A stretch of 64,000 nt of DNA, from the NCBI RefSeq assembly GCF_036588685.1, contig NC_086379.1, positions 21,576,001 through 21,640,000 of the forward strand. The letters are read 5' to 3'. This document shows, piece by piece, positions 31,601 through 53,500 of this stretch (position 1 is the first letter of the stretch; every line of letters starts with the position of its first letter). The notes under the pieces were generated by a model. That model made no database searches and was not told the DNA's origin. It saw only the letters and a program-made list of their open reading frames with translations. Origin of the DNA: Mytilus trossulus (Eukaryota). The position numbers and the translations under genes were made by a program.

Positions 31601-34600
31601 AGAGCTATGAGTCTTCTTTTTGCTTTCTTAAAAGAAAAAAAAGATTGAACATATGAAATTGTAACTTTTAAAAGATTCATTTGGTCAATACAATTTTCTG
31701 AAAGCATTAAAAATAAAGTGAGGTTTGTTTAAATACAGTACTGAAACAAAGAATCATGTTTGTTTGTTGATAATTTTAATACTTCAGCAGTTGTCATTAT
31801 CCTTTTAAAAAAAGACAGTTTTTTTGCTCTTGTTTTTTTTTAGAACACTGTGTATCTGTAAGCTCTTTTTTTAAATGAAGATGTTGGCCCCACATGAATA
31901 CTGAACAAGTCAATCTAATAACAAAACCTGACGACAACTAAGCTGATGTTGAAAGAACAATGGTCACTGTACCTTATAGCTTGGTAAAAGTGGCACATGA
32001 TTTTACATATAAAATATAATTATAACAAAAGACTTTAAGAGTCATTTCACATTCATGGAACAAATATTTTTCTTTATCAAAGTCTTTCTGTGTATTCTAT
32101 AATGTCCTATAATTGTACAAGTAGTTTTATCTATGAGTCTTTCATAAAGATATTTATTTTAAATGTTTATCATCATTATTCACAAATAACTTTTCTGGCA
32201 ATTATATGATAAACACCTTTTCTCAGAATGAATGTTGATGCTTGTGATATCCCCAACATTTATGACTGATGAGAGAGTAACAATATAAATTATCTGTCAA
32301 TTAGTGTTATTTTCATATAAATGAATGATTTTAAAAGATTTACTTTACCTGCCTACATTTATCCTGTATAATTAAGCTGTAAGGTATACTGTAATACATA
32401 CAGATATGTATGTATTTATTTTCGCGATAATAAACCAACTGTGAAATTCGTGAATATAAATGCAAAAATAAGTACAATTAGAGTATATTTAACAAGAGAT
32501 AGGCCTATGTCTGGCCACTTTTTGTGACAGCAAATTGCAAATAATGATGCATACCTCCTTTTTCCTTTCATATAGAGCTCTTTTTCTCTTTTCACCCTCA
32601 TACTTGTTTTTGCTTATAGCAGATTGCTGCTGCTTCTTTGTTAAAAAATATCTTGCCATGGCACCTACAAAAATCAGTAGCACAATCAAACCTGTGACTA
32701 TATATTTTATAACAAAAAATCATGATGTTTAAATATATATATACTGCAGCTGTGCTATGCGAGCAGTCAAATTGCATTGACCGTATATTCATATGTGATA
32801 TACAGTCACTGACCCTATATCACCTTGTTTATGCCGTTGACAATTTGTTTCTGTAGAGTAAATAAAACATACAGGTTCATGGAAATTTAATGTCGTCCGC
32901 TTCAAATTAAGAAATGATATTTTTTACCCAAAATACTTCATTTAGAACAGTTTTAAGAGTTGCAGTACATGAAGAATAACCATACATTGTCTCGAAATAT
33001 CAATGTTATTTTTACTTGGCTCGAAACAGGTAGAAATGCTAGGCGCAGCCTCGTTTTCTACCTGTTTCGAAGCCTTGTACAAATAACATTGATATTTCGA
33101 GACAATGTATGGTTATTCTATATATATATATATGTGAATTCTTTATAGCTAATACCACTTGTATCAAAAATCTAGGGATCAAACTTGGGTGTAGAAACTA
33201 GATTGTCAAATCTTTCTAAAAGTGTCGGTGCATTTTGTAGAGGTGTATTAACAATCAATGTGAAATGAGAAAACATGTTTACCTACAGTGTGATTGAAAT
33301 CAAAGTGCATCAGGGACATATCAGAAAATAGGAGCGCCAAGAGGTTTGATTTTAATCAGACTGTGTTCCTAAGTTATTGCATGCATTCATTTTATTATTT
33401 ATTAAGAAATTATTATCTTCAAATCATACAGTAATTGTAGATTTTAAATAATTACTTATAATATTTTATTTGTATCATAGAGAGACAACTCTTCTCTTCA
33501 GCAGAATGATCAGACTGTAAATTATATTTCCTAATTTTACAATTTAAAGAAGTATAGGGGAAAAGTAAAGAGTCACTGTAAGCTTTTGAAATTTATATCC
33601 ACTTACAATTCAATACGGTGATGTCATTGTATGCTGGATTCCAGCCTTTAACAAAGGTAACGATATGCGACGTCATATCTTTGTTTACTGCATCACTAAC
33701 TCTGAAATGAAAAACATACACATGTACATTCTTGCTAATGTATATACTGAGTATATAGCATATGCATACCTTTCATATTAATGCATATATCAAGATTTTT
33801 GATAACTACATGTACATATATTGTAACATTTGAATAGTAACTTTCAAAATACTAATAAATAAAACCATGCCTTGAAAAATTGACCAATCGACACTATGAA
33901 CTGCAATGCATTGGGAGTTACTACAAGTTTACTTGGCATCACATAAAACATATAGAATCATACGTTAAAAACTATGAAATCATATAGTGTATAAGACTCA
34001 AATTCAACATTGTTTTTTATTAGACAACATATGAATTGTAAAATATTTAACAATACTTTGCATGCCCAGGTTAAAAAATTATTCTGGTGGCTGAAACAAC
34101 CAACATCAACATTTTGCCCTTCTTGTCAATACAGTAGAACAGGTTTAGACCATTAGATTTTCTTAAGCTTTGTACACAATAAAATTGAGAATGGAAATGG
34201 GGAATGTGTCAAAGAGACAACAACCTGACCGTAGAAAAAAACAACAGCAAAAGGTCACCAACAGGTCTTCAATGTAGCGAAAAATTCCCGCACCCAGAGG
34301 ATTCCTTCAGCTGGCCCCTTAACAAATATATCGTAATGGCATTCATTATGTGAAAACAAAATTTTAGGTGCTGATCAAATATTGTAAAAACACCTTTTTC
34401 CTTCAAATCTCCAGCTGAGACCTTTTTCTTCTCCATCTTTGTACCCTTGTTTCACAGCATTCTGCAACATAAAAGGTAGTTTTGGAAACATTTTAAAGGT
34501 TTATTTTTTTGCCAATTGAATTATTAAAATAACTGTACTGTAAATGAAGAGTTGCCAACGTCAATTGTCTATTTGACAGTAAAAAAATACAGTCTTACTA

Positions 34601-37600
34601 TGGAGGCATAGTAATAACAAAAAGAAATGATAAGTGAGAGCTTGAAAAAATGTATAAATTTTAGTTAAAATTCATAGGGCCTTGTTTCAGGGTGGTATAA
34701 ATGGGGTAACTTCATGACGAATAACGGTAAAATTTCTTGCCAAATGATATTTACGTTTTTTTTGTGTGCATGACAATAAAATATGCACTTTCTTTTAGAC
34801 GAGAAAAAAATTGAATGACTTTGATGAATCATGTTAATTCTTTTCCAAAAATAACTGTGATAATAATTATTTGAGACCTCTGACATATCACCATACAGAT
34901 ATTTTGATGAATCACGCTAAAATCTTTATCAATTTGAGGCTAACAGTAGCCTTAAATGGCCTTTTTACACCTGACAGTAAAGGGCATTGCTACTCTCTTG
35001 TATATAAATACTGGTTGGTCTTTTAATAAATATTTTACCGCAAGCAAGGGTACAATACAAGCATTCACTTTCATTTCAAGTCCCCTTTTCCTATTATTAA
35101 GGAAAAATGGTGACATTGATTACTGTTATTCCTTTTGTTTGTTGCCATTTTTGTGCTGTTAAGTTGTATTTTAAGTTAACAAAATTCAGAATGTGCAAGT
35201 TAACAAGTAGTTTCTGAGTTGAAAATGTAAGCTTTCCATTGGTTTTTGTCATAAAAAGTCATCAAGTCAAAAAAAATATATATAGATATATAGACAAATT
35301 TTAAAACAGAGTGAAACTCTTGAAAGCTGTGCATGTGGAAATGGATTGACATGGGGCAAAAAAAAAGCCATTAAGTGATCCTCACTGATATTGGTTTTAC
35401 CTTAACTCCTATTGGAACTACTAAATTTTCTTTAGATTTAGCAGAGCTGCTTTCATGTCCTGTCTGTGCTCTCAGTCGCTGTAATATTTCCCCCTGCCTC
35501 TCAAATATTCTTATCAATAATTCTCTTTGACCTGTGCAGATGAAGAAAAGATTATAAATGGATAATTGGACTACTGTAAATTCAGAAATTGTTGTGTGCA
35601 TTTATTATTGCGATTTTGTCATCTTAGACTAATATGCGATTTTGTGAAAAATCCTGTGTAATTCATATAAAATATTTCAAAATGCAAGTTTCAATTAATG
35701 CGTTTACAACTTGGTCTCATTTTCGCAATAATAAAAACCTCCCATTAATTTCTGAATTTACAGTAATTCAATTTAAATTCAGAAACAAAATACACAATTC
35801 TAAATACCTTGTTTTATGATTAAAAGCTTGTCCTGCACCTTAAAAGCAGCCATACCCTATATTAATTTTTACACCCTCATATCTAACTATATTTAATCTC
35901 TAAGTTTTTTAAATGGATCATAATAAAAAGTCTATTAAGATTTGCCAGGATATCATTTCTATGCTTAATAAGTGGTTTTAAACTGGTCTATGAGTGTGAA
36001 TAATTTTTATGCAACAACCACCTGTTCTATGACATGGACCTGTTGTTCAGTGGTGATTGTTTGTTGGTTTTATTCAAATGAGTTAATCGTTTATTATTTA
36101 CGGTAGTGTTTTTTATATAGATTAGACCAATGGTTTTTCTGTTTGAATTGTGAAAAATACTCATTTTGAGGCTCTTTAAAGCATGCTGTTTGTTGTGATC
36201 CAAGGCTCTGTGTTACAAGTCATACTTTTGTCAACTTTTTATTCATTCTGACTAGCATGACTAGGATATATGAAGGTTGTCTCATTAGCACTCATACTAC
36301 ATCTTCTTATTTATATAATATTATACATGCATGACCTTCATTATATTTGTGAACAGAAAGCAAAAAAACTATTTCTAATGAAAAATCAGTAGATTGTCTC
36401 AAAGAAAAAAATCTTTTAACTTACACATTAATAACAAATAGACCAAATTTGATAAAAAAAAATCACAATTTCATGCACTTTTGTTAATCTTGTGATATAG
36501 AACCCCCTACATTGTACTATATGACACATCTTCAAATAAATTGTCCAGTGGCGGATCCAAGGGGGGTTCTGGGTGTTGGAACCCCCCTTTCTTTTAGGCA
36601 ATCAATACATTTGAATGGGAGCATATACTTGAAAACCCCCCTTTTTACTCTGGGTTGGGACCTCCCTCCCCCCAATTTTTAAAAAGGCTGGATAGTCCAT
36701 ATGCAAATTAAATGTAAGATCCGCCTGATCAGTTGAAATGATAATATGTGTCATATGTGTAATATGTATAAATCTTACCAAGACTGTGAATATCATTGGA
36801 ACTGGTATGCATGGGTCTTGCATTTGGTGTACTGGACTCTCTACAAGGACCACTGCTACCAGCGCTGCCAACACCACTTGTCCTTGGTGTATTAATACCA
36901 CTTGTCCGGCTTGGTGTATTAATACTACTAGTGCTTGGTGTATTAATACAACAAGTGCTTGGTGTATTTATTCTACTAGTGCTTGGTGTATTAATACTAC
37001 TAGTGCTTGGTGTATTAATACTACTAGTGCTTGGTGTATTCATCCTGTTCCGGACTGGTGTTTGATTTATCTGTAAAGATATTTTCATTTCTTAGGTGTT
37101 AAGCAATTTCGTACAAAAAGCGTGTATTTGAGTACTTGCATGTCTTATGTGGAGACATGGAACACAGTACTTAGTTATAGGGAGCTACCATTTGATTTTT
37201 ATGGGGAGGGGGGGGGGGGGCTAGGATGAAAAATTGTGTCTTGCATTTTTTTTTAGTTGTAATCTCTGTCCTGCCTTTTTATTTTTCACTCTAGACTCTA
37301 TCGTGTCTATCTGGTCCTGGTTTTTTTGTAGTTTATCCTGACTTTTTTAAAAATAAAATTGTCATCCTGCCTTTTTTTCTCAAACTCCTGTCCGAGCCCT
37401 ATTTTTTTCAAATTTCATCCTAGCCCTAACCCCCCCTCCCCCCCCCCCCCCTCAATAAAAATCAAATGGTAGCTCCCTTATCACTATGCAAAAATGAAAC
37501 ATAGAAAAACAGTCATATCCATTTTATGGTCAGACTATATGATTTATACGGATAAGATTATCTAAGATTCATGGTTATATGCACAGGCACTTGTTTCTAT

Positions 37601-40600
37601 CCATTGGAAGAACCACTATCAACGTATATTCGTAAATATACGTTGATAGTGGTTCTTCCAATGGATAGAAACAAGTGCCTGTGGTTATATGAATGATGTA
37701 TAATTTTCTGACAGTCTGTCCTATGCTAAATTTAGACATTGGGGTTTTCCATCTGATTTTCGTTGATGTAAGCGGTTAGGAGGATTTCGTTATAAAATTG
37801 TTGCAAAGTGCGTGTTTAATATGTCTAATATCACCAGTTTAATGACTAATAAAATAAAAACGGAGCTTCTTTGTCTACTGAGATTTTTTCTGTAATAGAA
37901 AAGCCGACATTGACACAGCCTATGCCCCTTAGATCATCATAACAACATGACAGTAATATGTTTTTGAAGTGAGATGGTTATCTAGATCTTGTAAAAAGGC
38001 TGATGAAATTTGCGTTTAAAACATGTATACACACTTACTTGTCTTGATGTGGATGAATTCTGATGAAGGATATCAGGACTTGCTGCCAGGAATTCATCCG
38101 TACTTCCATCATCCTCGCTTTGACAGTCTTCGTGCTCGCTGTCTTGTATCAAATCTCTTAAATGACGTGCTTCTCTCTGTCGAACACGACTCCTTTGAAT
38201 AACAGCAAGAGGTGTTTCGTCTAAAGTTTCATCATCAGAAATATCGTTATAAGACATGTTTGATACTAGATTTACAGTGATGACAATATTCGTGTTTGAA
38301 TAGGCGCCGAAATCGCAAGAACCGTGTCTGCGGCTGTGTAAAAGAGATAAGGATGGCATGCCAAGATGCTGATTGGCTAAGTGTTAAAGACATTTCCATA
38401 TACAGATTGGAAAATAACCAAAACTTCAACCGCATGGGAATGAAACTTCAGCGCCATTATTGAACCTGAGAGTTTTATCAGCTTAGATTTGTTTTGATAA
38501 ATGGTGTAAGTACAAAATGCATATCATTTAAAAAACAGAAGAAAAAAAACATGGATATTGTGGTATATATGTGCCCTTCTCCAAAAGGTTCAATAGCCTG
38601 CTGCTGCAGCACCAGCACCACTGGGTGTTTCATGAAGAAACTCAGTTAGAGAAATTCTCATTGACACTTACAAAAACCTGCATGGTTTTAAAATACATGA
38701 TCCATTGTACATGTATGTATCTTGTTTTTATCTGAGGGGGAGGACAGGGGTCCATTCGCCCTTATTCACGTTCGCCATACTACGTTTTTGCCCTGATACC
38801 TGTTCGCCCAGGGTCCATTCGCCCATATTTTTATTATTTTCTGTTTGTTGTCCAGTCGCATAATTTTAAGTATTTGAACAAAATATACTAAAGTTTGTTA
38901 ACAAATTGACAGAGTATTTATATTGCCGCAATAATTTTTATCATTTTCTCTTTGATTTACAGAGTAGAATTGGTAACCATATACAATGTATTTCTCTTTA
39001 TTGATATTTGTTAACAAAATGATTGTATTCAGCTGTCAATCATGAATGTATGCAGTATAACTGAGAATAGCACTGTCTCCGAGTATAATAATGAACTTGT
39101 AAATCCGTTTCATGATTAACAGTTCGTACATCATTGTGAATATATACCATAAAAATATCTGAATAAGTTTATCAACTTCAATGCCCTGAATATCAATATT
39201 TTTTAGTAGGGCGAACGAACTCAGGGCGAACGTACCCAGGGCGAACATGTTATTAGGGCGAACGATCCCGATACCCTCCCACCCCTGTTCTCCTTTCTCC
39301 TACCCCTCTTCTCCTTATTTTTTTTTTAATTTACCGAAAAAAAAGAGAGATATTTTATTTTTTCATATTTTATTTTTTCTCCAACTTTTTCTCCTTTCTC
39401 CCAGCCTTCCTCTCCTTTCTCCTACCCCCTTTCTCCTTTCTCCTACCCTCTTTCTCCCTGTCTCCCTTACCCCTGTCCTCCCCCTCTTATCTTATACCAA
39501 AAAATTAAAAATAGAAATTGAAAAATATAACTTTAATGTTGTACATGTACATTTACATATATATGCATTTCTGACAGCCATTTGTGTAAAAAAAAAGAAA
39601 GTAATATGAAATTAAAAAATATAACTTTAATCCTAAACAATATATTGTTTTAAACCAGGCATATGCACCAGAAAGTCATCATCAGCAATAAATGTTTTTT
39701 ATATATAGAGGGGGATACATGTATGACCTTTATCTGGACTCCAGAATCAGGTGTTTTTTTTGAAAATTTTTTAGTCATACATTGGTATCACTTTGTAGTC
39801 TTCTTCGTCCGAATACTTTTGGTTTTCACACTGTTACTTTAGTATAAATCAATAGAAATCTATGAAATTTAAACGCAAGATTTATGACCACTAAAGGAAG
39901 GTTGGGATTGATTTTTAGATTTTGGTTTCAACAGTTAAGGAATTAGGGGCCAAAAAAGGGCCCAAATAAGCATTGTTCTTGGTTTTCGCACAATAACTTT
40001 AGTATACATGTAAGTAAATAGAAATCAATGAACATAAGGTCTATGACCACAAAAGGAAGGTTGGGATTGATTTTGGGAGTTGAAGTCCCTACAGTTTAGG
40101 AATTTGGGGCCAAAAAGGGTCCAAATAAGCATTTCTCTTGGTTTTCACACCATAACATTAGTATAGGTAAATAGAAATCTATTATAATATATAGATAGAG
40201 ATAAACTTTAAACAGCAAGAATGTACAGTTAATTATAAGTAGACCTAAAAAAAAGTCAACATGACCAAAATGGTCAATTGACCCACTAAGGAGTTATTGT
40301 CCTTTATAGTCAATTTTTAACAGTTTTCTTAAAATTTGTAAATTTTTACTAACATTTTCCATTAAACTACTGGGCAAAATTCATTATAGATAGAGATAAT
40401 TGTAAGTAGCAAGAATGTTCAGTACAAACACATCACCATCACCAAAACACAATTTTGTCATGAATCCATCTGCGTTTAATTTTCACATAGACCAAGGTGA
40501 GCGACACAGGCTCTTTAGAACCTTTAGTTATTTATACCTGTATTAACCTGTATCATACGTAGTTACCTGTAATATTGACTTAAATGAAAGGTTTTATTGT

Positions 40601-43600
40601 TGACTCAAATGAAATATATAGTTTGTGGCGCAAATGAAAGATTTTTCAGCGCAAATGAAATGCCTATTGGTGCAAAAGCTAAGCACTGAACTGATTCAAC
40701 CTTTCTGCTAGGATTTGGACAAACCAATTTAGTTTTTTTCAAGTGTGGCCTAGTTCCAATGCTAACTTGTACATTTTGTACCAATATAAAAAAAGAGGAT
40801 GTGGTATGATTGCAATAAAGACAAGTCTATCAACAAGATACAGTAATTAACAACTATAGGTCACCATACCACCTTCAGCAATGAGCAATTAATTTGAGAT
40901 AATTGAAGAAAAAATTATCACTATTAAAGAAATGTATATTTCCAGATTTCAAAAGGTCACCAAATTGACAGGTGATCCACAAATTCTTTCAGAGTCTAGT
41001 TTGGTGACCTTTTTTTTTATATAAAAATTAAATATCTTTATTTCAGAATGCTTTATGGAGAGATTATAGTGATAAAGAGAAGTGGTGTAGATGGAGCACA
41101 TTTTCTTTTAACTGTTAAAGACTGTTTGTTAGGAAGGTAATTATAATTAAAATACTTATATACAATGTAAAAGAAAATGATTATCTGTGGAAATTAACAT
41201 TAAAAGGGGAGTTAACTCTGCAAAAATGACTCTTTTTTGTCAGTTTTTGGTTGATTTTCTTTAAATTTGTGTATGATACTTTGATGGGGTTATAAGTTTG
41301 TGTATGATTATATTATATAATTTTCTTCTCATGAAATGTACAAAATTATATTCTGGGTTATGGATATTTAATATATACTAAAAATTAAATCTTAAAAATC
41401 TTCTGTTGCTATAACGATGAGGTTAGGGTCAAATTTATGCTAGATTAATAGATTGACTGGACAATAATGCATTCTGGATAGTATCCAAGCTGATCTGTGT
41501 CCACACTTGTTTTTAATGTAAATAAAGGGCTACAATGTAGTTGTAGATGAGATTGTTCTGAAATCATAAGAACTAGTTAGTTTCCCCGCTCGCTGTTAAG
41601 GATTATCATTAAGAATGTAGCTTAAGTTTGACCCAAAAGTCAAACCATTATCATGATTATAGTATAAACCATATGTAGATTTGTGCTGGGTTTTTTTTCA
41701 GGGGCAAAGATTGTGATATTATAATTAAGCTTCCAAATGTTTCTGCAGAACATTGTAGAATTCATGTATCAGACAATAAACAGGTAAATTGTATTTATAA
41801 ACAGGTGAATTGTATTTTAAAGATCTTTGTTCACTTAAACTAGTACCAAACCATGAAAAAAACAGTACTGATGATCATGCTGATATATCCAGTGGTGGAT
41901 CCAGGGGAGGGAGGGGTTTGGGGGTTGGACTCCCCCTTTTTTTTGCTGATCAATGCATTTCATCCCCCCCCTTTTTTTAAATGTCAGGATTCGCTCCTGT
42001 ATATTTGGTTAAAAAAAGTTGTTTATGTTTTCTTACCCTGATGTTTATGACCATAGTTATTGTATCAAACACTATCATTAAATTAAAGTGTAGATTATCT
42101 TCCTATTATGTCCTTATTTTTTTTATGCCACACCTGTTAAATTATGGATGATAAATAAAAAATGGGAAATGATAGGAGGAGTAGGACATCTTTGTACTGA
42201 GGAAACATTTTCTTTTTCATGCCAAAGTTTATTCAATTGTATATACAACAAAGTTTAATTTGATTGGTAAAATTAACAACTATAAGATAAGATAATTTTA
42301 TTAACCAATCAAGGTGCCCAAAATTTGAGCTATACAATCAAATGAATGAATTACAAAATAAAGCACAGAAAATGATTAAAGTACATAACATTTAGACAAA
42401 AAAAAACACACATAAAAACACATTTACACTTATTAACCTGATATAAACCAAGTTATTGACAACACATAGTTGTTATGGGTGCCACTGTGATCTGGAGAAA
42501 TTACATAATTCTTTATAGTACTAGGTCAATGGGAGACAACTCCTGATCAATTTTATTCGTTATATATATCTACATTTTTCTTCTATTTTTTTTTAGAACA
42601 ACAATATTGTCTATACTTTTCTTTTGTTCTTCAGAAAGAGAGTGCAATAAATTAGATAAGTTTGAAGTAACAAACAAATCTTCAGATGAAAGAATCTAAA
42701 CAAATTTCTATAAGTCACTAAACAATATGTCTAATTATAAATCATTCTTTTGTCCAAAAATGTTTTATTTTGAAAAAAAACCCGACTGTATGAAAGACAT
42801 GAAATATGTACTGTTCATTTCTTTTGTAGGTTTTTTTGACAAACTTGAGTATAGATAATCCCGTCGTGGTCAACTCTTCATATTTTGACAAACCAGTAAA
42901 ATTGAATCATGGAGATGTATTCACCATCATAGACCGATCTTTTCGCTTTGATGAAACAGAGGAATCAATGCAGAGCAAGTTAAGAAATCCAGATAAAGAT
43001 TTGAATTTGAACAGACCATTAATCAGGATAGATGATGCATCAAAGGTAATTTGTATTTTTAGTTCCATACTGACAAAGTTGAAGTAGACTCTAGGTTTGC
43101 ACTCTGTCCGTTTGTTGATCTGTTCATTTGCATGTCTGGCAAATCATTTTTCTTCACTTTTTCTTCTTGCTTGAAGATATTGATTTGATTTTATCATGGC
43201 AAGTTACAGATCAAGTTCAAGATTTGTGTCAGTCTAATGATTTTGTGCAGAGTTATGGTCCTTGGAAAATTTACCTAAATAATCAGTGTTCCATACTTTT
43301 TAGTCCACTACTGATGAAATTGAAGGGGACTTTAGGTTTGCACTCTGTCTGTTAATCCATTCTTCAGGGCGGCAAATCAGTTTTCCATTTTTAGCTCACC
43401 TGGCATGAAGGGCCAAGTGAGCTTTTCTCAACACTTGGCGTCAGTCGTTGTGGTCGTTAACTTTTTACATTTTTAACCTCTTCTAGAGAACCACTGTAGG
43501 GAATGACACCAAACATGGCACAAATGTTCCTTATGAGGTGCTAACCAAGTGTTGTTACTTTGTAGCCAATCCATCATCCAAGATGGCCACCAGCGGGGGA

Positions 43601-46600
43601 CTTAGTTTAAAATAGGACTCTATGGGAAATGCATACAAATGACTTCTTTTAAAGAAACACTGAATGGAATGAAACCAAATATGGCATGAATGTTCCTTAT
43701 GAGGTGCTGACCAAGTGTTGTTACTTTGTAGCTGATCCATTATCCAAGATGGCCTCCAGCGTAGGACTTAGTTTAACATAGGACCCTAAGGAAAATATAT
43801 ACAAATGTCTTCTTTTAGAAAACCACTGAATGGAATGAAACCAAACATGGCATGAATTTTCCTTATGAGGTGCTGACCAAGTGTTGTTACTCTGTAGCGG
43901 ATCCATCATCCAAGATGGCTGTCAGTGGGGGACTTTTGAATGAAATCAAACCTAGCCTGAATAGATATAGGAAGATGTGGTGTGAGTGCCAATGAGACAA
44001 CTCTCCATCCAAATAACAATTTAAAAATTAAACCATTATAGGTTAAAGTACGGCCTTCAACACGGAGCGCCTTCAACACGGAGCCTTGGCTCACACCGAA
44101 CAACAAGCTATAAAGGGCCCCAAAATTACTAGTGTAAAACCATTCAAACGGGAAAACCAACGGTCTAATCTGTATAAAGAATGTTCCTTTCCTTATAAGG
44201 TTGTGTTGTTACTTATAGCCAAATTTTATATTTATTTATATGATTTCAAAAACCCAAGTAGAATCAGGTGAGCGATACAGGCTCTTTGGAGCCTCTAGTT
44301 TTCTTTGTTCTTGAAGATATTGATTTGATATTTGGTATATAGTTTTATCATGACAAGTTCATATAAATCATGGAAGAAATTTGTTTCAGTCTTATTATTT
44401 TGTTATGGTCCATATCTAATATTAGAGTTCTATATATGTTAAACCATATTTCTGTACAAAGGGAGATACATGTAACTCATTTTTAATAGACATTCCTTGG
44501 TAAATTGTTTGAAATTTCTTTGCTTTTTCAAACTAATTTTCTGAATGCTATATATATAATTTTTCTTTATGATGCAAAATCCTTTGATTAGATGATAATC
44601 TATTTTCATTATGTTATATATCTTAATACATTACATTGTGTAGATAAAAGTTGTTGACAGTTTATAGATAGATATTTAACAAATTTTAATTAGTTTGTGA
44701 CACATAAAAGATAAAATATTTGGAATTATTAATTATATTTGATTATAATCTAAAAATAGATATATATATTGTATTACATCGTATCTTTTGTCTTGTTAGT
44801 TTTTTCAAATTTCTTTCATTATGCTTGAAAATATTGATTGATAATATTTATACGTACAAACACATTAATGCTACTTATACTTCCTTTTAGTCTTTGAAAA
44901 GTAAAAGTCAAAAGAAGTCAAAAGAAGAAGTGAAGTCTAGAAGCAAAAGACGTCGTATGCTGAAGAAACAAAAGTAAGAATCATAATTTAACATGTTTAT
45001 ACTTGCTTCCTCAAAAATAATTGTTATATTGTGGCTTATGAAATATTACTTTATTGAATTAATATTGAATCTGATTCCTAATACTTATGAATAAAAACAA
45101 AAATAAACTTTCACACTATCCTGAATACAATATAGTTGTTCATGATCATCTATCACTGTCTGGAAAAAAATCATTGGAAATGCAAGACATAGGGAATTTG
45201 CAACTCAGTTACTATTAGCATCAAGCTTTATATTGAAGAAGATGTTGCATGAGTGCCAATGAGACAACTCTCCACCCAAGTCACAATTTATAAAAATTAA
45301 CCATTTATATATAGGCCAAAGAACAGTCAAGATTCACCACTAAGCTTTGACTAACACTGATCAGTTAGCTAAAAAGGTCCCCAAAATGTTCTAGTGTAAA
45401 TCCCATCTTGGAGAAACCAAGGGTCTTATCTATATAAAAACGAGAAAAACTAATGAACCACATCAACAAACTACAACTACTAAACATCAGATTTATGCCT
45501 TAGGACAGGTGCTAACAATAACAGGGGGTTTAAATCTTTACCCTTATCTGAAACAATAGTGTAACATCACAACATAGAAAGACACCTTATAAAATATCAA
45601 TTGAAATTGCTTAACTAAATCAAAAGACATATTAACACAAGAGAACATACACTGAACGAAGAAATTTGATCTATGATATAAAAAAAGATGTGGTATGATT
45701 GCCCCTGAGACAACTCTCAACAAGAGACCAAAATGACACAGAAATAAATAACAACTATGGGAAACCGTGCAGTCTCATGAATAACAAATCTGTATCACTT
45801 AAAAAAAAACGACAACCACTGAATTACATGATACAATGTAAACAATTAAATAAACCAATTTAGTAAGGCCGTTAGTTTCAGGTTAAGATGATCATGAATT
45901 TCAATCAACTTGAACTTTGTGACTTCAACTTGAAACTCAGTATTTATATTCACCGTGATATGATCTATCTTATTTGAATGAAACTACCAATAAGAAAGGG
46001 ATCAAGAAACTGCTGTAGGAGACTTGTTGTCTCAAGGATTTCAAGAAAAAAATGTTTCTGCCTAATTGGTCAGCTTGTTACATGTATTAAACAAACAACC
46101 CAAACTGATTCTGACATGCCCAAAAATTCAGTTATTGTTACTACATGTATTATAAAGATGCCGTTTTTATTCTTTTTACTGTAGAGTTGTAAAGGCAAAT
46201 GTTAACCATTCACTTTTATTTCAGATATTGGAAACGAAGAGAAAAAGAATGGGAAAATGACAATATAGATGAAGTAGTTGAAAATGAGAATAGACAAATA
46301 GGAGAAACAAAAGGAAAAAATAGTGTAGATAGCTTTTATGTGGACATGTTTAAAGATCCACTATTTTCGAAAATGGTCACATACCAAAAGGCTAAGAGAT
46401 TATCCTTAGCTTTGAAAGAAAACGGACAGAAAAATAATGATATTTTAGAATAGATTTGGATTTATATATAGTTTTATATAGCAAATGTTTAAAATTTGTT
46501 CATTTTATATATATTAGCTCATAATCAAAATCTGCATTTAATAGTCAAGTGGATTATGAATAGGAATTATTCAATTTCATGTTTAAACAACAAATTTTAT

Positions 46601-47536
46601 GTAAATTTTGAGATAACATTTCTGTCCTTATCTTTGGTTCAAAAGATATGAATAAGATTTTAGAGAGCATGCACATTGACTACTAGTGAAGCAGCTACTT
46701 GTATTCAAGAAAGCTTGCACATTGGTTTATTATACAGTGAAGCAGCTACTAGAATACTTAATTCATAATTTTGAATCAGAGCTTTATTACATTTTTCATG
46801 GCAGAAAAAGCAAAGCGTCCAAGAAAATCTTGCCCTAAATGTTATACAGTTTTTTCAGACAGACATGCTCGTAGACATCTACTTGAATGTAATGTTCAGT
46901 TTTGTGAAAGTGAAGTATCTCAATCTGATAATGAAAATATACCCCTGTCAAGTGTGGGAAATAACACATCAAATTATCAAAATAATATCAGTGATGATGA
47001 AAATGAAATAAATTATGATTGTATGAATAAATTCAGAAATTTATCAAATATATCCCGTAATAATTTAGAAGATGAGGATATTGAAAGCTACTTTGATAGA
47101 TGTGAAGATAATCTGACTGATTCATATAGTTCTGATAATTACTCAGATGTAGAGTTTGATATTGAATGTCATGAAAGTATTGGTGTAGATCAAGAACATA
47201 ATTCAGAGTCAGATATATCTCAAATTACTTACTGGTTTTGTAAACTTTTATTATTATGGCAATGTATTTATTATATATCAGATGCAGCTATTTGTTTTCT
47301 TTTGAACATTTTAGCTACATTTTTTAAATTGTTGTCAGTGAATTCAGATGTTTGTTCTAAAGTACAAAATGTTTTTCCCAAAAACATGTACCAGTTGTCT
47401 AAACTTTTGAAAAGTGATATGTTAGATTTTAAACAATATGTTGTTTGTACCAACTGCTATTCATTGTATGAATTCGAAGATTGTTATACGACCGCAAATT
47501 TTGAAAAAATTTTCGTCGTATATTGCTATCACGTTG

Positions 47537-47568
<32 letters not shown>

Positions 47569-50500
47569 CGAATACTTTTAGTTTTCACACTCTAACTTTA
47601 GTAAAAGTGAATAGAAATCTATGAAATTTTAACACAAGGTTTATGACCATAAAAGGAAGGCTGGTATTGATTTTGGGAGTTTTGGTCCCAACATTTTAGG
47701 AATTAGGGGCCAAAAAGGGCCCAAATAAGCATTTTCTTGGTTTTCGCACTATAACTTTAGTTTAAGTTAATAGAAATCTATGAAAATTTGACACAAGGTT
47801 TATAACCACAAAATAAAGGTTGGGATTGATTTTGGGAGTTTCGGTCCCAACAGTTTAGGAATTAGGGGCCAAAAAGGGACCCAAATAAGCATTTTTCTTG
47901 GTTTTCGCACCATAGCGTTAGTATAAGTAAATAGAAATCTATGAAATTTAAACACAAGGTTTATGACAATAAAAGGAAGGTTGGTATTGATTTTGGAAGT
48001 TTTGGTCCCAACAGTTAAGGAAAGAGGGGCCCCAAAGGGTCCAAAATTAAACTTTGTTTGATTTCATCAAAATTGAATAATTGGGGTTCTTTAATATGCC
48101 GAATCTAACTGTGTATGTAGATTCTTAATTTTTGGTCCCGTTTTCAAATTGGTCTACATTAAGGTCCAAAGGGTCCAAAATTAAACTTAGTTTGATTTTA
48201 ACAAAAATTGAAACCTTGGGGTTCTTTGATATGCTGAATCTAAAAATGTACTTAGATTTTTGATTATTGGCCCAGTTTTCAAGTTGGCCCAAATCGGGGT
48301 CCAAAATTAAACATTGTTTGATTTCATCAAAAATTGAATAATTGGGGTTCTTTGATATGCCAAATCTAACTGTGTATGTAGATTCTTAATTTTTGGTCCA
48401 GTTTTAAAATTGGTCTGAATTAAAGTGCAAAGGGTCCAAAATTAAACTAAGTTTGATTTTAACAAAAATTAAATTCTTGGGCCTCTTTGATATGCTGAAT
48501 CTAAACATGTACTTAGATTTTTGATTATGGGCCCAGTTTTCAAGTTGGTCCAAATCAGGATCTAAAATTATTATATTAAGTATTGTGCAATAGCAAGTCT
48601 TTTCAATTGCACAGTATTGTGCAATGGCAAGAAATATCTAATTTCACAATATTGTGAAATAGCAAATTTTATTTTCAATTAAGAGTTATCTTTCTTTGTC
48701 CAGTATAGTAAGCAAGAAATATCTGCAAGAATTTTTTTTAATTGGAGTTATCTTTCTTTGTCCAGAATCAACTTAAATCTTTGTTATATACAATATACAA
48801 TGTATATTCACTTTTTACTACCAACTGATAAATTTAAATAATCTTTACCATTCAGTGATAACAAGCAGTTTTTTTACATCATGTATTTAAATGAGTAGTA
48901 ATTGTTGCAAACTCCATTATAATATTTTAATTGAAATTAGTTTTGGAATAAGGGAAAGGGGGATGTGAATAAAAAATTGGGTTAAATTTTTCTCATTTGA
49001 AATTTCATAAATAGAAAGAAAATTTCTTCAAACATTTTTTTGAGAGGATTAATATTCAACAGCAAAGTGAATTGCTCTAAGAGAAAACAAAAATTTTAAG
49101 TTCATTTGAATACATTCATTCTGTGTCAGAAACCTATGCTGTGTCAACTATTTAATCACAATCCAAATTTAGAGCGGAATCCAGCTTGAATGTTGTGTCC
49201 ATACTTGCCCCAACCGTTCAGGGTTCAACCTCTGCGGTCGTATAAAGCTACGCCCTGCGGAGCATCTGGTTATCATATTGTTGAAGGTTCAAAAGTCTCT
49301 AAAAAGTGCTCTTTTATAGAGTTTCCTAATCATAGACTTCCTTATTTGAGAAAAAGATGTAATCAGCCTCTTTTAATGGAAATTAAAAGTGAACCTTCAA
49401 AAATATTAGCCCCTTTCAAAATATACTGTTACAAATCTATTGAGTCCAGCTTAAGTTATTTTGTTAAAAGACAACATTTTGAAGACTTATGTGAACAATG
49501 GCGATTGAGAGAAACAAGGGAAGATATTATGTATGACATTTATGATGGAAAATTATGGGATGATTTTAATGGGAAAAAATATATTTTTTTTACAAAAGAG
49601 GATAATTATGGTTGCATTTTAAATGTTGATTGGTTTCAACCATACAAACATACTCATTGTTCTATAGGTGTCATGTACATAGCATTTTTTAACCTTCCAC
49701 GAGATCAAAGATTTAGAAGAGAAAATGTTTTACTAGTTGGTGTTATTCCGGATATGAAAACAGAGCCTAAGACAAACACCTTTGTTACTCCTCTTGTTCA
49801 AGAACTAAAGAAGTCTTGGTCAGAAGGTTTTCAAATGTTTTCAAATAAGTCACCTTTGATATTGAAATGCTTTAAACTTGCACTCATATGTGTTGGATGT
49901 GACATTCCTGCTAGTAGAAAGTTGTGTGGTTTCCTTGGACATGCAGCAACCTCAGGTTGCAACAAGTGTAAAAAGAAATTCCCAGGAACAGTAGGTGAAA
50001 AAAATTATGGTGGTTTTGATAGATTAGAATGGCTGTCCAGAGACAACGAAAGTCATCGTCAAGAATGTGGTTTGATACACAATTCTACTAGCAAGGGAGA
50101 CAAAGAGAACCTTGAACGTCAGTTTGGTACAAGATATTCGGCATTGCTTGACCTTGACTACTTTGATCCAGTAAGAATGACAGCAATTGATCCAATGCAT
50201 AACTTATTTTTAGGAACAGCAAAACACATGCTTTCTGTATGGAAGACAAAGAAATTATTATGTGATGATGACTTTAAAAAAATTCAGACAAAACTGGATC
50301 CGTTTGAATGTCCTTCAGATGTAGGGAGACTACCCAAGAAATTTGCTTCATCCTATGGGTCATTTAATGCAGATCAGTACAAAAATTGGACCCTATTGTT
50401 TTCTATATATGCTTTAACTGATTTATTGCCAAAGGAACACCTTGATTGCTGGAGAAAGTTTGTGTTAGCATGTAGAAGATTGTGTTCAATGTATATTAGT

Positions 50501-53500
50501 GTTGGTAATGCAAAAGTTGCAGATAGATTGCTAGTTGACTTTTGTAAAAAATTTGAACAATTGTATGGGCAAGATTTTGTCACACCGAATATGCACCTTC
50601 ATGGGCATTTATATGATTGTATAATAGATTTTGGACCAGTATATTCTTTCTGGCTTTTTAGTTTTGAAAGAGAAAATGGTATATTAGGCTCTTACAAAAC
50701 TAATAAAAAAAACATAGAGGCTCAGTTAATGAGGAGATTTTTAAGAGTCTTTTGCAAGGGAAAAAGAATCCCAAATGGATGAAAGATTTATGTCTTTATT
50801 CAATGATATGTCAAACACTACAAGGGAGAGGGGTACATTAAATGATGTTTCTGTTTCTTTGAAACCTAGCATTCTCGATATGTCATCACAATTTGTACCT
50901 ATAAAAGAAGTATGTTGGTATTTATCAGATAACATTTTTGTTCCAAAAATGAAGGATGCTGTTCTGAGTGATTGTGAAATAAGACTGTTAAGCCAAATGT
51001 ATTCAACACTGTATCAGTATGATTTTATTGTTTGTCCCTCTGTCAAAGTGTGCAAAACCTTGTATTTAAATGGAACATTGCTTGGTTCCAAAATGAGCAG
51101 AAGTGTAAGATCATCCTATATTACAGCTTATTGGTGTAATAACGAAGGGACAATTGACACTGACAATTTCGATTTATCTCCTCATCCAGGACAAATTGTA
51201 CAAATGTATAAGCATAGTATTATTGTAAATGGAGAAACAAAGACACATTTTTTAGCAAAAGTCAATTGGTACAAGAATTTACCTGCTTCTGTACAGCACT
51301 ATTATGGCAAACCGATTGAAATATGGTCTTCAGAATTATTTGTTCAAGAAGGACCTGCATTATTTATACCAGTACACAGAATTAAATGTAGGTTTGTTCA
51401 TGCGAAAGCAAAATTTAACAGCAGAAATGTAATTATTGTTGCACCAAGAGAGCGTCATATTTTATGAATATGGATCCACTTATAATGATACAATTTATAA
51501 TCATATTGTTTTACTTTGTACAAAAAAATACAACTATTTAAGAAATTGATTATTTGACAATGTCAAAATTACAATATTTTCTTGTCATGATTCTATTATT
51601 TAATTTTATGAATGTGTCATAACTTTTTATATATTTTTTCAAAGAAAGTACTTTCTATGGAGTGTATTTGATTATTGTAGATATTTATGATGTTATGAGT
51701 ATTCCTTTTGTATTGGATATTTAGATGTGTTTTGATGTAGTGTGTGTTATACTAATCTTACATGCCAGTACTTGCTTTGAAACAGTTATATGTAAATAAA
51801 TTAAACATAAAGTTTATTATTAAATAAACAATTTTGTTACAATTATTGTAGTTATTTATATACCACTATTATTTATGTTTGCTTAACAAATAGCAAAAAA
51901 GGTTGAGTTCATGCATGGTTCTAATACCCAGGTGTTATACATGTATCATTGAATCATACAAAATTCTTATAAACTATTTCATTTACCGGTAATACTTAGG
52001 GAAAATCTTTCAAATGTATAAAGATGTGTAAATTTTATCATATAACAAAGTATTGGAGAAAGGTCAAATGTTTCCTCAACAGTTTAAGTCAGTGAAGTAG
52101 ATATGTACTCTTTCAGCGAAACATCCTGTAGACAATAGTAGTAGTTAGTTTGCTGAGAATGGTTTATAGACACGACTATTAACATAAGGTTTTACATTCA
52201 GTCATTAATTTGGGGGGGGGGGGGGGGGGGGAGTCATAAATAGTTTACCTATACCTTTTGACGTGCATTAAATGTCACAGATAAAATTTAGAATGGAAAT
52301 GGGGAATGTGTCAAAGAGACAACAACCCGACCAAATAAAAAACAACAGCAGAAGGTCACCAACAGGTCTGTCATAAACATTTTACATACAAAAAATGTCG
52401 AAGGTTGTCTGTTCTCTACCTTCTGACACGCACACAATGTCAAAGGTTGTCTGTCCTATCCCTTTTGACATGCATAAATGTCACAGAAAGTCTTTCCTAT
52501 ACATTTTGACATACCACAAAATGTCAAAGGTTGTCTGTTCTATACCTTTTGATATGCATAAAATGTCAAAGGTTGTCTGCTCTATAACTTTTGATATGCA
52601 TAAAATGTCAAAGGTTGTCTGTTCTATACCTTTTGATATGCACAAAATGTCAAAGGTTGTCTGTTCTATACCTTTTGATATGCACAAAATGTCAAAGGTT
52701 GTCTGTTCTATACCTTTTGATATGCATAAAATGTCAAAGGTTGTCTGTTCTATACCTTTTGATATGCACAAAATGTCAAAGGTTGTCTGTCGATTACATT
52801 TCAAGGTTCACAAAATGTCAAAGATGGTCTTTTATATACATTTCAACATACCAAAATGTCAAAGGTGGTATTTTGTCAATAAAAAGGCGACAAAATATTA
52901 TCTGTAGAAGAAGGTAATCTTTTGATTGTATTTTATTATACCCAAAAGTTATCAAAAGATGATTTTTCATGCAGTGCAATCATTGTTAATTAACCTCTTA
53001 AGTAAAACGAACAACCAATATCATGAATATAGACATCAACAGTCAAGATTTCTTAATCGAAAATAGGACATTATACATACGAAGTCGGTATATATATATA
53101 CGAATGTAACAACTTTGCTGGTATCTAAAGTTCTCAGATCTTAATCACCAAGTCATATAGTTAGTAATAGTCGGCTTTCAGTATTCCGGGTAAAATTGAG
53201 AATGGAAATAGGGAATGTCTCAAAGAGACAACAACCCGACCAAATAAAAAAACAACAGCAGAAGGTCACCAACAGGTCTTCAATGTAGCGAGAAATTCCT
53301 GGACCCGGAGGCGTCCTTCAGCTGGCCCCTAAACAAATATATTGATAATGAACGCCATACTAATTTCCAAATTGTACACACGAAACTAAAATTCAAATAA
53401 TACAAGACTAACAAAGGCCAGAGGCTCCTGACTTGGTACAGGCGCAAAAATGCGGATGAAGGTAAATCCCGGAAAAAGCTTCGAACGCATGACATTTAAT

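What the first reader, a model, noticed from the sequence alone, without database searches (positions are those of the whole stretch)
41048..46453. Ki-67 FHA domain captured as a stand-alone mini-gene inside the transposon
Seen: five phase-consistent exons encode ~232 aa, namely a Ki-67-like FHA retaining the phosphothreonine-binding G-R, S-x-x-H and N residues, then a Lys/Arg-rich NLS-like segment (KSRSKRRRMLKKQKYWKRR) and a short tail. Established: true Ki-67 is very large and has a PP1-binding motif and repeats, and its FHA binds phosphorylated NIFK and KIF15/Hklp2 in mitosis; those parts are absent here. From memory, the first two coding introns fall where human MKI67 has introns, which implies DNA-level capture. 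Inference: the element co-opted a mitotic phospho-reader, either as a tether to mitotic chromosomes or nucleoli or as a decoy. I know of no such transposon cargo being described.
Basis: partly seen in the sequence, partly recalled or inferred. Interest (0 to 1): 0.92.

Follow-up and report, generated by a model that had tools for sequence, protein, structure and literature searches.

The report
Mussel transposon carrying Ki-67 FHA gene
A 23-kb cut-and-paste transposon in a mussel genome carries a spliced 234-residue gene whose front half is the phospho-threonine-reading FHA domain copied, introns included, from the host's own Ki-67 gene and fused to the transposon's small basic protein; this appears undescribed, and its function is untested.

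Summary
Window 41048-46453 (+) has five GT-AG exons, plus a sixth upstream exon (ATG at 38501). Together they equal the 234-aa RefSeq protein XP_063444097.1, "proliferation marker protein Ki-67-like" of Mytilus trossulus, annotated on a contig the same length as the window's. Residues 8-109 match the human Ki-67 FHA structure at E 2e-30. No PP1 motif or repeats follow.

The gene lies inside a 23,078-bp CACTA/EnSpm-type element (29899-52976). The element has CACTGCAT terminal inverted repeats, a 3-bp CAA target duplication, subterminal repeats, an accessory gene and a now-broken Tnp2 transposase.

The host's real full-length Ki-67 gene is on another chromosome. It has identical exon boundaries and phases in the FHA region, so the capture was at the DNA level.

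One refinement: the gene is a chimera. Exons 4-5 belong to the element's own small basic protein, which a related element encodes, and expresses, without FHA.

Selection evidence is mixed. A second, decayed copy in this genome shows only neutral change. Across Mytilus species the ORF is intact, with FHA, basic helix and tail motif conserved. Against the host gene, dS is about 1.1 and omega about 0.26.

No expression reads could be obtained, and function (phospho-dependent tether or timer) is inferred only.

The parts
29896..29898 (.). Left target-site duplication CAA
   Evidence: CAA directly flanks both ends of the element.
29899..29913 (+). Left terminal inverted repeat CACTGCATCAAAAAT
   Evidence: 14 of 15 bases match the reverse complement of the right end; homology to the related C14 element starts exactly at 29899.
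30067..30302 (+). Left subterminal direct repeats (about 78-bp units containing TCAAAAGGTGTATAAAAG)
   Evidence: A similar core motif occurs in inverted orientation at the right end.
31315..38257 (-). Accessory gene of the element. Last exon ORF 31315-31707, Thr-Pro repeat exon about 36729-37088, first coding exon ending at ATG 38257.
   Evidence: ORFs. The last exon is 62% identical in protein to the same gene in the C14 element. No Pfam family. I did not verify the exon model; it is taken from note s1-823987.
38440..38505 (+). Upstream exon of the FHA gene: 5' UTR plus ATGGT, donor GTAAGT. It lies head-to-head with the accessory gene. The 5' limit is not determined.
   Evidence: the only ATGGT|GT site upstream. 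It explains the 'MV' start of the RefSeq models P0081 and P0084.
41047..41136 (+). FHA exon 1 (MLYGEIIVIKRSGVDGAHFLLTVKDCLLG + 2 nt)
   Evidence: Same acceptor (cag|aATG) and donor phase as host Ki-67 coding exon 1; 69% aa identity.
41702..41783 (+). FHA exon 2 (carries G-R and S-x-x-H)
   Evidence: Same borders as host exon 2; 63% aa identity.
42830..43045 (+). FHA exon 3 (NHGDVFTIIDRSFRF core plus linker)
   Evidence: Same acceptor as host exon 3; 72 codons against 75, both ending AAG|GTAA; 58% aa identity.
44891..44973 (+). Exon 4: Lys/Arg-rich segment, element-derived
   Evidence: The homologous exon in the C14 element starts with its own ATG and has the same donor phase.
46225..46453 (+). 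Exon 5: variable acidic stretch, conserved tail motif FYVDMFKDPLFSKMVTYQKAKRLSLAL, stop codon
   Evidence: Homologous exon with the same acceptor just upstream of the C14 transposase. The motif is kept in P0005, P0084 and P0098.
46798..47486 (+). Transposase, N-terminal part (starts MAEKAKRPRK...)
   Evidence: 41% identical to the C14 transposase N-terminus.
47487..49268 (.). Secondary insertion of a 1.78-kb high-copy repeat that splits the transposase ORF
   Evidence: at least 40 genomic copies at 95-99% identity; the C5 copy has the empty site.
49272..51467 (+). Transposase core and C-terminal part (Transposase_21/Tnp2, DUF4218), with a frameshift near 50780
   Evidence: PF02992 at E 1.6e-11 and 44 bits against a cutoff of 28.6; PF13960 is weak; two overlapping ORFs; intact relatives of about 1000 aa elsewhere in the genome.
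52366..52870 (-). Right subterminal 42-bp tandem repeats
52962..52976 (-). Right terminal inverted repeat (element ends ...ATTTTTCATGCAGTG)
   Evidence: Homology to both C5 right ends and to C13 stops exactly here.
52977..52979 (.). Right target-site duplication CAA

Best explanation
A CACTA/EnSpm-type (CMC) DNA transposon of Mytilus carries three genes: an accessory gene, a Tnp2 transposase and, between them, a chimeric gene.

The first three coding exons of the chimeric gene are a DNA-level copy, introns included, of coding exons 1-3 of the host Ki-67 gene. That covers the complete FHA phospho-threonine-binding domain. These exons are spliced onto the element's own two-exon small basic protein, which has a Lys/Arg-rich helix and a conserved DPLFSKMV.YQK tail.

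The gene is read from a promoter region shared head-to-head with the accessory gene.

Shown: the exon structure, the FHA identity, the transposon borders, the separate host parent gene, and the FHA-less form in a related element.

Inferred: the product is nuclear. Its FHA domain reads a CDK-type phospho-threonine mark; the known ligands of Ki-67 FHA are phosphorylated NIFK and KIF15. This would couple the element's small protein, probably a DNA-binding or transposase cofactor, to proliferating or mitotic cells, either as a tether or as a timer.

The window copy has an intact FHA gene, but its transposase is broken, so this copy is no longer autonomous.
For: Gene model and FHA identity.

Transposon borders: terminal repeats and the CAA duplication. 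Homology to the C5 copy, the C13 deletion derivative and the divergent C14 element ends exactly at the termini. The flanks next to the element are single-copy. The transposase matches Pfam Tnp2.

Host parent: C4 carries FHA exons with the same borders, then a 756-aa TP-repeat exon, a PP1_bind exon (E 1.7e-13) and a 501-aa Lys-rich exon.

Copy number: only three Ki-67-type FHA loci in 1.3 Gb, and both close copies sit in this element.

Chimera: the C14 element has e4- and e5-like exons at the same place and phase, with its own ATG and no FHA. Its spliced 103-aa product, P0098, lies on a 1.8-kb assembled contig.

Constraint: M. californianus has a 234-aa orthologue at 88% identity. The three conserved blocks show 11 of 165 residues changed, against 12 of 31 in the acidic linker (p about 1e-5, blocks chosen after seeing the alignment). 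A divergent FHA-plus-tail family, P0005/P0082, lies on two M. galloprovincialis chromosomes. Against the host FHA, dS is about 1.1, dN about 0.28 and omega about 0.26. The mini-gene FHAs form one clade beside Mytilus host Ki-67.
Against: The two copies in this genome differ by 9 nonsynonymous and 0 synonymous changes. Exon divergence (1.31%) is no lower than intron divergence (1.75%, p 0.52). The C5 copy has a 10-nt deletion that frameshifts exon 4.

The window copy has L where every other sequence, human included, has P in the HFPL motif.

Both transposase copies are dead.

Expression therefore rests on RefSeq models whose evidence I could not inspect.

The C14 element shows no matching 3-bp duplication.

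The omega of 0.26 mixes the host and transposon lineages.

No binding or localisation data exist.
Confidence: 0.72

Rival explanations
1. It is an inert transduplicate. The element picked up a 5' piece of Ki-67, as Pack-type and CACTA elements do in plants. The chimeric reading frame is transcribed at most as a by-product and has no function for the element or the host.
For: Within the genome the pattern is neutral: 9 nonsynonymous and 0 synonymous changes, with exons no more conserved than introns. The C5 copy is frameshifted. Both elements have dead transposases. The window copy has a unique P-to-L change in a conserved FHA strand.
Against: The capture is old (dS about 1.1 against the host), yet pN (0.235) is far below pS (0.577), and the frame, borders and pThr-binding residues are intact. 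M. californianus has a same-length ORF at 88% identity with strongly uneven conservation. A second, much more diverged lineage (P0005) still combines FHA with the same tail.
Confidence: 0.17
2. It is an ordinary host paralogue of Ki-67, or a domesticated gene, that only lies next to a transposon. The second copy arose by segmental duplication, not by transposition.
For: There are only two close copies. The C5 copy lacks the left 5 kb and has no left terminal repeat. RefSeq annotates it as a normal gene, and it is conserved in four Mytilus species.
Against: The gene lies between the accessory gene and the transposase, inside terminal repeats with a 3-bp duplication. The divergent C14 element has the homologous exons 4-5 at the same internal position. 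Homology to C5 and C13 stops exactly at the right terminus. P0005 and P0082 are near-identical on two chromosomes.
Confidence: 0.06
3. The fusion runs the other way in time. The FHA-fused form is ancestral in this transposon family, and the C14-type 103-aa gene is a secondary loss of the FHA exons. This changes the history, not the nature, of the finding.
For: In the FHA tree, P0005 groups with the other mini-genes (support 99/85). In the tail, the window gene is closer to C14 (55%) than to P0005 (44%). On its face this makes C14 nested within FHA-bearing lineages.
Against: P0005 sits on a very long branch (2.09), so the similarity ranking may reflect rate and not branching order. There is no root, and no transposase sequence for the P0005 elements.
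Confidence: 0.4

Closest known systems
Ki-67 (MKI67) and its FHA domain (PDB 2AFF, 1R21)
   Same: The N-terminal FHA domain is of the Ki-67 subtype (E 2e-30). It has the G-R, S-x-x-H and N pocket residues and the same exon borders as the mussel's own Ki-67 gene.
   Different: It has 234 aa instead of thousands. It has no PP1-binding motif, no repeat region and no C-terminal chromatin-binding region. Its C-terminal half comes from a transposon gene, and it is encoded inside a mobile element.
Gene-fragment capture (transduplication) by plant CACTA elements and Pack-MULEs
   Same: A cut-and-paste element carries host exons with their introns while the parent gene remains elsewhere in the genome. 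The superfamily hallmarks match: CACT terminus, 3-bp duplication, subterminal repeats. The comparison with plant cases is from my own knowledge.
   Different: The host is an animal (bivalve). The cargo sits in an autonomous-type element next to the transposase. It encodes a complete domain fused in frame to an element protein, and it has kept its frame over dS of about 1 and across species. Most plant transduplicates are fragmentary pseudogenes.
En/Spm TnpA-type second proteins of CACTA elements
   Same: A non-transposase protein is encoded beside the transposase in an element with subterminal repeats. The small basic protein could play the repeat-binding role.
   Different: There is no sequence similarity to TnpA, and no Pfam family for the tail or the accessory gene. 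DNA binding has not been tested.
Transposable-element proteins that tether to host chromatin factors (for example Ty5 integrase with Sir4, which depends on phosphorylation)
   Same: The element would use a host-interaction module to choose when or where it acts. This is an analogy from my own knowledge.
   Different: Here the reader domain itself was taken from a host gene. No tethering has been shown.

Membership tests
Ki-67-type FHA domain | Significant match to the FHA profile | tested here: met
   PF00498 at E 8.7e-14, 52.1 bits against a cutoff of 20.7, for P0081.
Ki-67-type FHA domain | Closest to Ki-67 FHA and not to other FHA subfamilies | tested here: met
   2AFF/1R21 at E 2e-30; next is CHFR at 7.5e-4. 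The library search returns Ki-67 proteins.
Ki-67-type FHA domain | Phospho-threonine pocket residues G-R, S-x-x-H and N | tested here: met
   LGR-G, VSAEHC and TNLS..NP are read in the translations and in alignment A1.
Ki-67-type FHA domain | Binds phosphorylated NIFK or KIF15 | not testable with these tools
   Needs a binding assay.
Ki-67 protein (MKI67 orthologue) | PP1-binding RVxF/KiR motif | tested here: not met
   No PP1_bind match in P0081. It is present in the C4 host gene (PF15276, E 1.7e-13).
Ki-67 protein (MKI67 orthologue) | Long disordered repeat region and a basic C-terminal chromatin-binding region | tested here: not met
   The gene ends at residue 234. The C4 gene has 756-aa, 399-aa and 501-aa exons of that kind.
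CACTA/EnSpm (CMC) DNA transposon | Terminal inverted repeats beginning CACT(A/G) | tested here: met
   CACTGCAT[C/G]AAAAAT at 29899 and 52976. The same termini occur in the C14 element.
CACTA/EnSpm (CMC) DNA transposon | 3-bp target-site duplication | tested here: met
   CAA on both sides of the window copy. Not seen for C14 (TTC against AAT).
CACTA/EnSpm (CMC) DNA transposon | Tnp2-type transposase (Transposase_21, DUF4218) | tested here: met
   PF02992 at 44.2 bits against a cutoff of 28.6. PF13960 at 19.5 bits is below its cutoff.
CACTA/EnSpm (CMC) DNA transposon | Subterminal repeats at both ends | tested here: met
   30067-30302 and 52366-52870, sharing the core TCAAAAGGT.TA in inverted orientation.
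CACTA/EnSpm (CMC) DNA transposon | Several copies whose homology ends at the termini | tested here: met
   C5, C13, C7:6.84 Mb and C14.
CACTA/EnSpm (CMC) DNA transposon | Present-day mobility | tested here: not met
   The window transposase is split by a 1.78-kb insertion and a frameshift. The C5 transposase has 3 stop codons.
Transduplicated host gene in a transposon | Host-derived exons with introns, and the parent gene elsewhere in the same genome | tested here: met
   Borders and phases of three exons are identical to the C4 gene.
Transduplicated host gene in a transposon | Transcribed and spliced | tested here: inconclusive
   RefSeq models in two species include the 5-nt upstream coding exon. 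The FHA-less relative has a spliced contig.

The most novel reading that the evidence does not exclude
The FHA-basic fusion is a working transposon protein. It uses a phospho-threonine reader taken from Ki-67 to recruit the element's DNA-binding or transposase complex to CDK-phosphorylated partners. Those partners could be NIFK at the nucleolus or the mitotic chromosome periphery, or the Thr-Pro repeats of the element's own accessory protein. Transposition would then be tied to dividing cells, germline cells included. This would be a transposon that acquired cell-cycle sensing by exon capture.
Probability: 0.27. Interest if true: 0.85.

Novelty: new variant of a known kind. Interest (0 to 1): 0.66.

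Why it matters
Capture of host gene pieces by cut-and-paste transposons is well documented in plants. There it mostly yields dead fragments. Here an animal transposon holds a complete signalling domain from a core cell-division protein, fused in frame to one of its own proteins. The fusion has stayed readable over a long time and in several mussel species.

If it is functional, it shows a route by which a transposon can gain cell-cycle or chromatin targeting. It would also provide a natural, minimal Ki-67 FHA module for studying what that domain binds outside vertebrates.

It also matters for annotation. Short genes labelled 'Ki-67-like' in mussel genomes are transposon genes, not proliferation markers.

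Tried and rejected

I could not see the surroundings of P0001, P0005 or P0084.

Searches ran exon by exon by reference, and later with P0081, the database protein that the tools returned.

Structure: an AlphaFold model from an 8-row alignment had mean pLDDT 51.7. I did not use it and ran no fold search.

Protein atlas: no usable hits for the tail or for P0098.

Tail profile search: it found only Mytilus-like fragments, so the origin of the tail outside this transposon family is unknown.

Empty-site search: both flanks are single-copy, so no paralogous empty site exists to confirm the duplication.

Left end at 34861: I first took this as a border because C5 homology starts there. I rejected it because it has no CACTG and because C14 and C13 share sequence further left.

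Possibility that downstream ORFs 46771-51467 are further Ki-67 exons: rejected, because they are a Tnp2 transposase.

Complex prediction: not run. Alignments are too shallow for a meaningful result, and I do not claim binding.

Literature: two searches found no report of a Ki-67 FHA in a transposon.


Full report
**1. What is there**

The window is chromosome piece C7:21576001-21640000 of a 1.3-Gb, 31% GC animal genome.

At 41048-46453 (+) I read five exons with canonical AG/GT borders and consistent phases. Their translations are:
- MLYGEIIVIKRSGVDGAHFLLTVKDCLLG
- (R)GKDCDIIIKLPNVSAEHCRIHVSDNKQ
- VFLTNLS...IRIDDASK
- SLKSKSQKKSKEEVKSRSKRRRMLKKQ
- (K)YWKRREKEW...KNNDILE*

A library search with exon 3 alone, followed by a cluster look-up, returned P0081. 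This is XP_063444097.1, 'proliferation marker protein Ki-67-like [Mytilus trossulus]', 234 aa. It equals these five exons preceded by 'MV'.

The contig recorded for that protein is 85,406,108 bp, which is the length of C7. The window is therefore almost certainly that locus in the M. trossulus assembly.

The 'MV' comes from a sixth, upstream exon. The only ATGGT|GT site between 38000 and 41047 is at 38501-38505, followed by GTAAGT. Exon 1 begins one base before its ATG, after a cag acceptor.

I did not type a joined model. All later whole-protein work used P0081 as the tools returned it.

**2. Identity of the domain**

- P0081 passes Pfam FHA at 52 bits against a cutoff of 20.7, and has no PP1_bind match.
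- Against solved structures, residues 8-109 match human Ki-67 FHA (2AFF, 1R21) at E 2e-30. The next family, CHFR, is at 7.5e-4.
- G-R, S-x-x-H and N are present.

**3. It is inside a transposon**

Downstream on the same strand lie ORFs 46771-47595, 49190-50782 and 50775-51467. They carry Transposase_21/Tnp2 at 44 bits (cutoff 28.6) and a weak DUF4218.

Homology to a second genomic copy ends at ...TTTTTCATGCAGTG, position 52976. The reverse complement of that end occurs once upstream, at 29899 (CACTGCATCAAAAAT, 14 of 15 bases). Both ends are flanked by CAA. Both ends are followed inward by subterminal repeats that share a TCAAAAGGT.TA core in inverted orientation.

Three independent comparisons confirm these borders:
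- A 21.9-kb relative on C14 (71104571-71126483, CACTGCATGAAAAC at both ends) becomes alignable to the window exactly at 29899.
- A deletion derivative on C13 joins window 30196-31159 directly to 51042-52976 at about 90% identity.
- The DNA immediately outside both ends is single-copy.

The element is therefore 29899-52976, 23,078 bp, of the CACTA/EnSpm (CMC) kind. In order it holds:
- an accessory gene on the minus strand (31315-38257);
- a head-to-head promoter region;
- the FHA gene;
- the transposase.

The transposase is dead in this copy. A 1.78-kb high-copy repeat (at least 40 copies at 95-99% identity) sits at 47487-49268. It is absent from the other copy. There is also a frameshift near 50780.

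**4. The host gene is elsewhere, and capture was at the DNA level**

The genome has only three Ki-67-type FHA loci: the window, C5:53.63 Mb (96% identical) and C4:68.93 Mb (58-69% identical).

The C4 locus is a long gene. After the FHA exons come:
- a 756-aa open exon of TPAKSP-type repeats;
- a 399-aa exon with KKKRISFGPSLSPEMFDKKLPPITPVRKG, which matches Pfam PP1_bind at E 1.7e-13;
- a 501-aa Lys-rich exon.

This fits the non-vertebrate Ki-67 homologues reported in molluscs (bioRxiv 10.64898/2026.06.18.733134, read).

The three FHA exons of the two genes have the same borders and phases:
- cag|aATG at the start;
- ...GGAAG|gtaa after codon 29 plus 2 nt;
- a 27-codon second exon;
- a third exon of 72 against 75 codons, ending AAG|gtaa in both.

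This refutes 'the genome's only MKI67 locus'. It also shows that genomic DNA was copied, not a processed transcript. I did not compare with human MKI67.

**5. It is a chimera**

The C14 element has no detectable FHA exons. It does have an exon at 71116545-71116616 that starts with its own ATG (MGKSKKNKAAVKARSKQRRIYKKQ). This is 62% identical to window exon 4 and has the same donor phase.

At 71120500 the C14 element has a last exon with the same acceptor as window exon 5, encoding ...DEFYKEMNDDPLFSKMVQYQKSKRFSAFL. It lies about 500 bp upstream of the C14 transposase.

A profile of the tail found P0098, 103 aa, on a 1,795-bp assembled contig. P0098 is the spliced join of those two exons, while the genomic intron is about 3.9 kb. 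The contig is therefore most simply a transcript.

So exons 4-5 of the window gene are the element's own small basic protein, and the Ki-67 exons are fused in front of it. Whether the fusion was gained in the window lineage or lost in the C14 lineage is open. In the FHA tree the divergent M. galloprovincialis protein P0005 groups with the other mini-genes (99/85), beside Mytilus host Ki-67 and an annelid sequence, and apart from vertebrates. P0005 sits on a very long branch, and the tree has no root within the family.

**6. Is it under selection?**

*Within this genome: no sign of it.* The C5 copy covers window 34861-52976 at 96-98% identity, with large secondary insertions and an inverted duplication. 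In the coding exons the two copies differ at 9 sites, all nonsynonymous. Exon divergence is 1.31% against 1.75% in introns (p 0.52). C5 exon 4 has a 10-nt deletion that shifts the frame. The C5 transposase has three stop codons. These two copies are decaying relics.

*Over longer times: the picture differs.*
- M. californianus has a 234-aa protein (P0084) at 88% identity with the same MVMLYG start. M. galloprovincialis and M. coruscus have 94-96% identical partial models.
- Between the trossulus and californianus proteins, changes are very uneven:

| Segment | Residues changed |
|---|---|
| FHA | 7 of 103 |
| Basic segment | 3 of 32 |
| Tail motif | 1 of 30 |
| Acidic linker | 12 of 31 |

  The heterogeneity test gives p about 1e-4. 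The blocks were drawn after seeing the alignment, but the FHA border is a priori, and the tail motif is independently conserved in P0005 and P0098.
- P0005 and P0082 (214 aa) are near-identical on two M. galloprovincialis chromosomes. They keep FHA plus basic segment plus the same tail at only 38% overall identity.
- Against the host FHA exons, dS is about 1.1, dN about 0.28 and omega about 0.26. This is too low for a copy that drifted freely for half that path. The donor lineage and the host's own omega are unknown, however.

**7. Mechanism**

Shown: a nuclear-type basic protein of a transposon carries a complete Ki-67-type phospho-threonine reader and is set up for divergent transcription with the accessory gene.

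Inferred from established knowledge: Ki-67 FHA binds CDK1/GSK3-phosphorylated NIFK and KIF15/Hklp2. From this, the fusion most likely couples the element's small protein to phospho-marks of dividing cells, as a tether (nucleolus or mitotic chromosome periphery) or as a timer.

A decoy role, or binding to the Thr-Pro repeats of the accessory protein (note s1-823664), is possible. None of these was tested.

**8. What is known, and verdict**

Gene-fragment capture by CACTA elements and Pack-MULEs is established in plants (my own knowledge). I found no report of a Ki-67 FHA in any transposon.

The gene itself is already in RefSeq as 'Ki-67-like', without its transposon context.

I rate it a new variant of a known kind. 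It is a real, well-bounded case with good evidence of long-term retention. Expression evidence is only indirect, and there is no functional evidence.

Noticed in passing
window 47487-49268: A 1.78-kb element with at least 40 genomic copies at 95-99% identity is inserted in the transposase ORF, with an approximately 4-bp GTTA duplication. The C5 copy has the empty site. It has internal tandem repeats and looks recently active.
   Followed up: partly
L028-L031 (C14:71104571-71126483): A related 21.9-kb CACTA-type element has CACTGCATGAAAAC termini. It has the same accessory last exon (62% aa) and a two-exon, 103-aa basic-protein gene without FHA. About six tandem 500-bp units lie in that gene's intron. 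No matching 3-bp duplication is present.
   Followed up: partly
L032-L034 (C13:27768727-27771762): An internally deleted, left-truncated derivative of the same family. It joins the left subterminal region directly to the last 1.9 kb of the element at about 90% identity.
   Followed up: partly
L006-L012, L018 (C5:53610149-53662254): The second FHA-bearing copy is heavily rearranged. It has insertions of about 10.8, 5.8 and 13.6 kb and an inverted duplication of the accessory-gene repeat region. It has two right ends about 5.1 kb apart, each followed by the same flank, which suggests a local tandem duplication or an assembly duplicate.
   Followed up: partly
window 36729-37088 (-): The accessory-gene exon encodes tandem INTPSTSS repeats (Thr-Pro sites). 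Note s1-823664 proposes them as a built-in FHA ligand. There is no Pfam match, and the idea was not tested.
   Followed up: no
window 504, 28481, 34179, 52281, 53191, 59597: A short MITE-like repeat of about 70-200 bp recurs six times in the window, twice near the right end of the element. It is very abundant in the genome.
   Followed up: no
L013-L015 (C4:68916657-68935167, -): The host full-length Ki-67 orthologue. It has FHA exons, a 756-aa TPAKSP-repeat exon, a PP1-binding exon and a 501-aa Lys-rich exon. It is a useful reference for mollusc Ki-67.
   Followed up: partly
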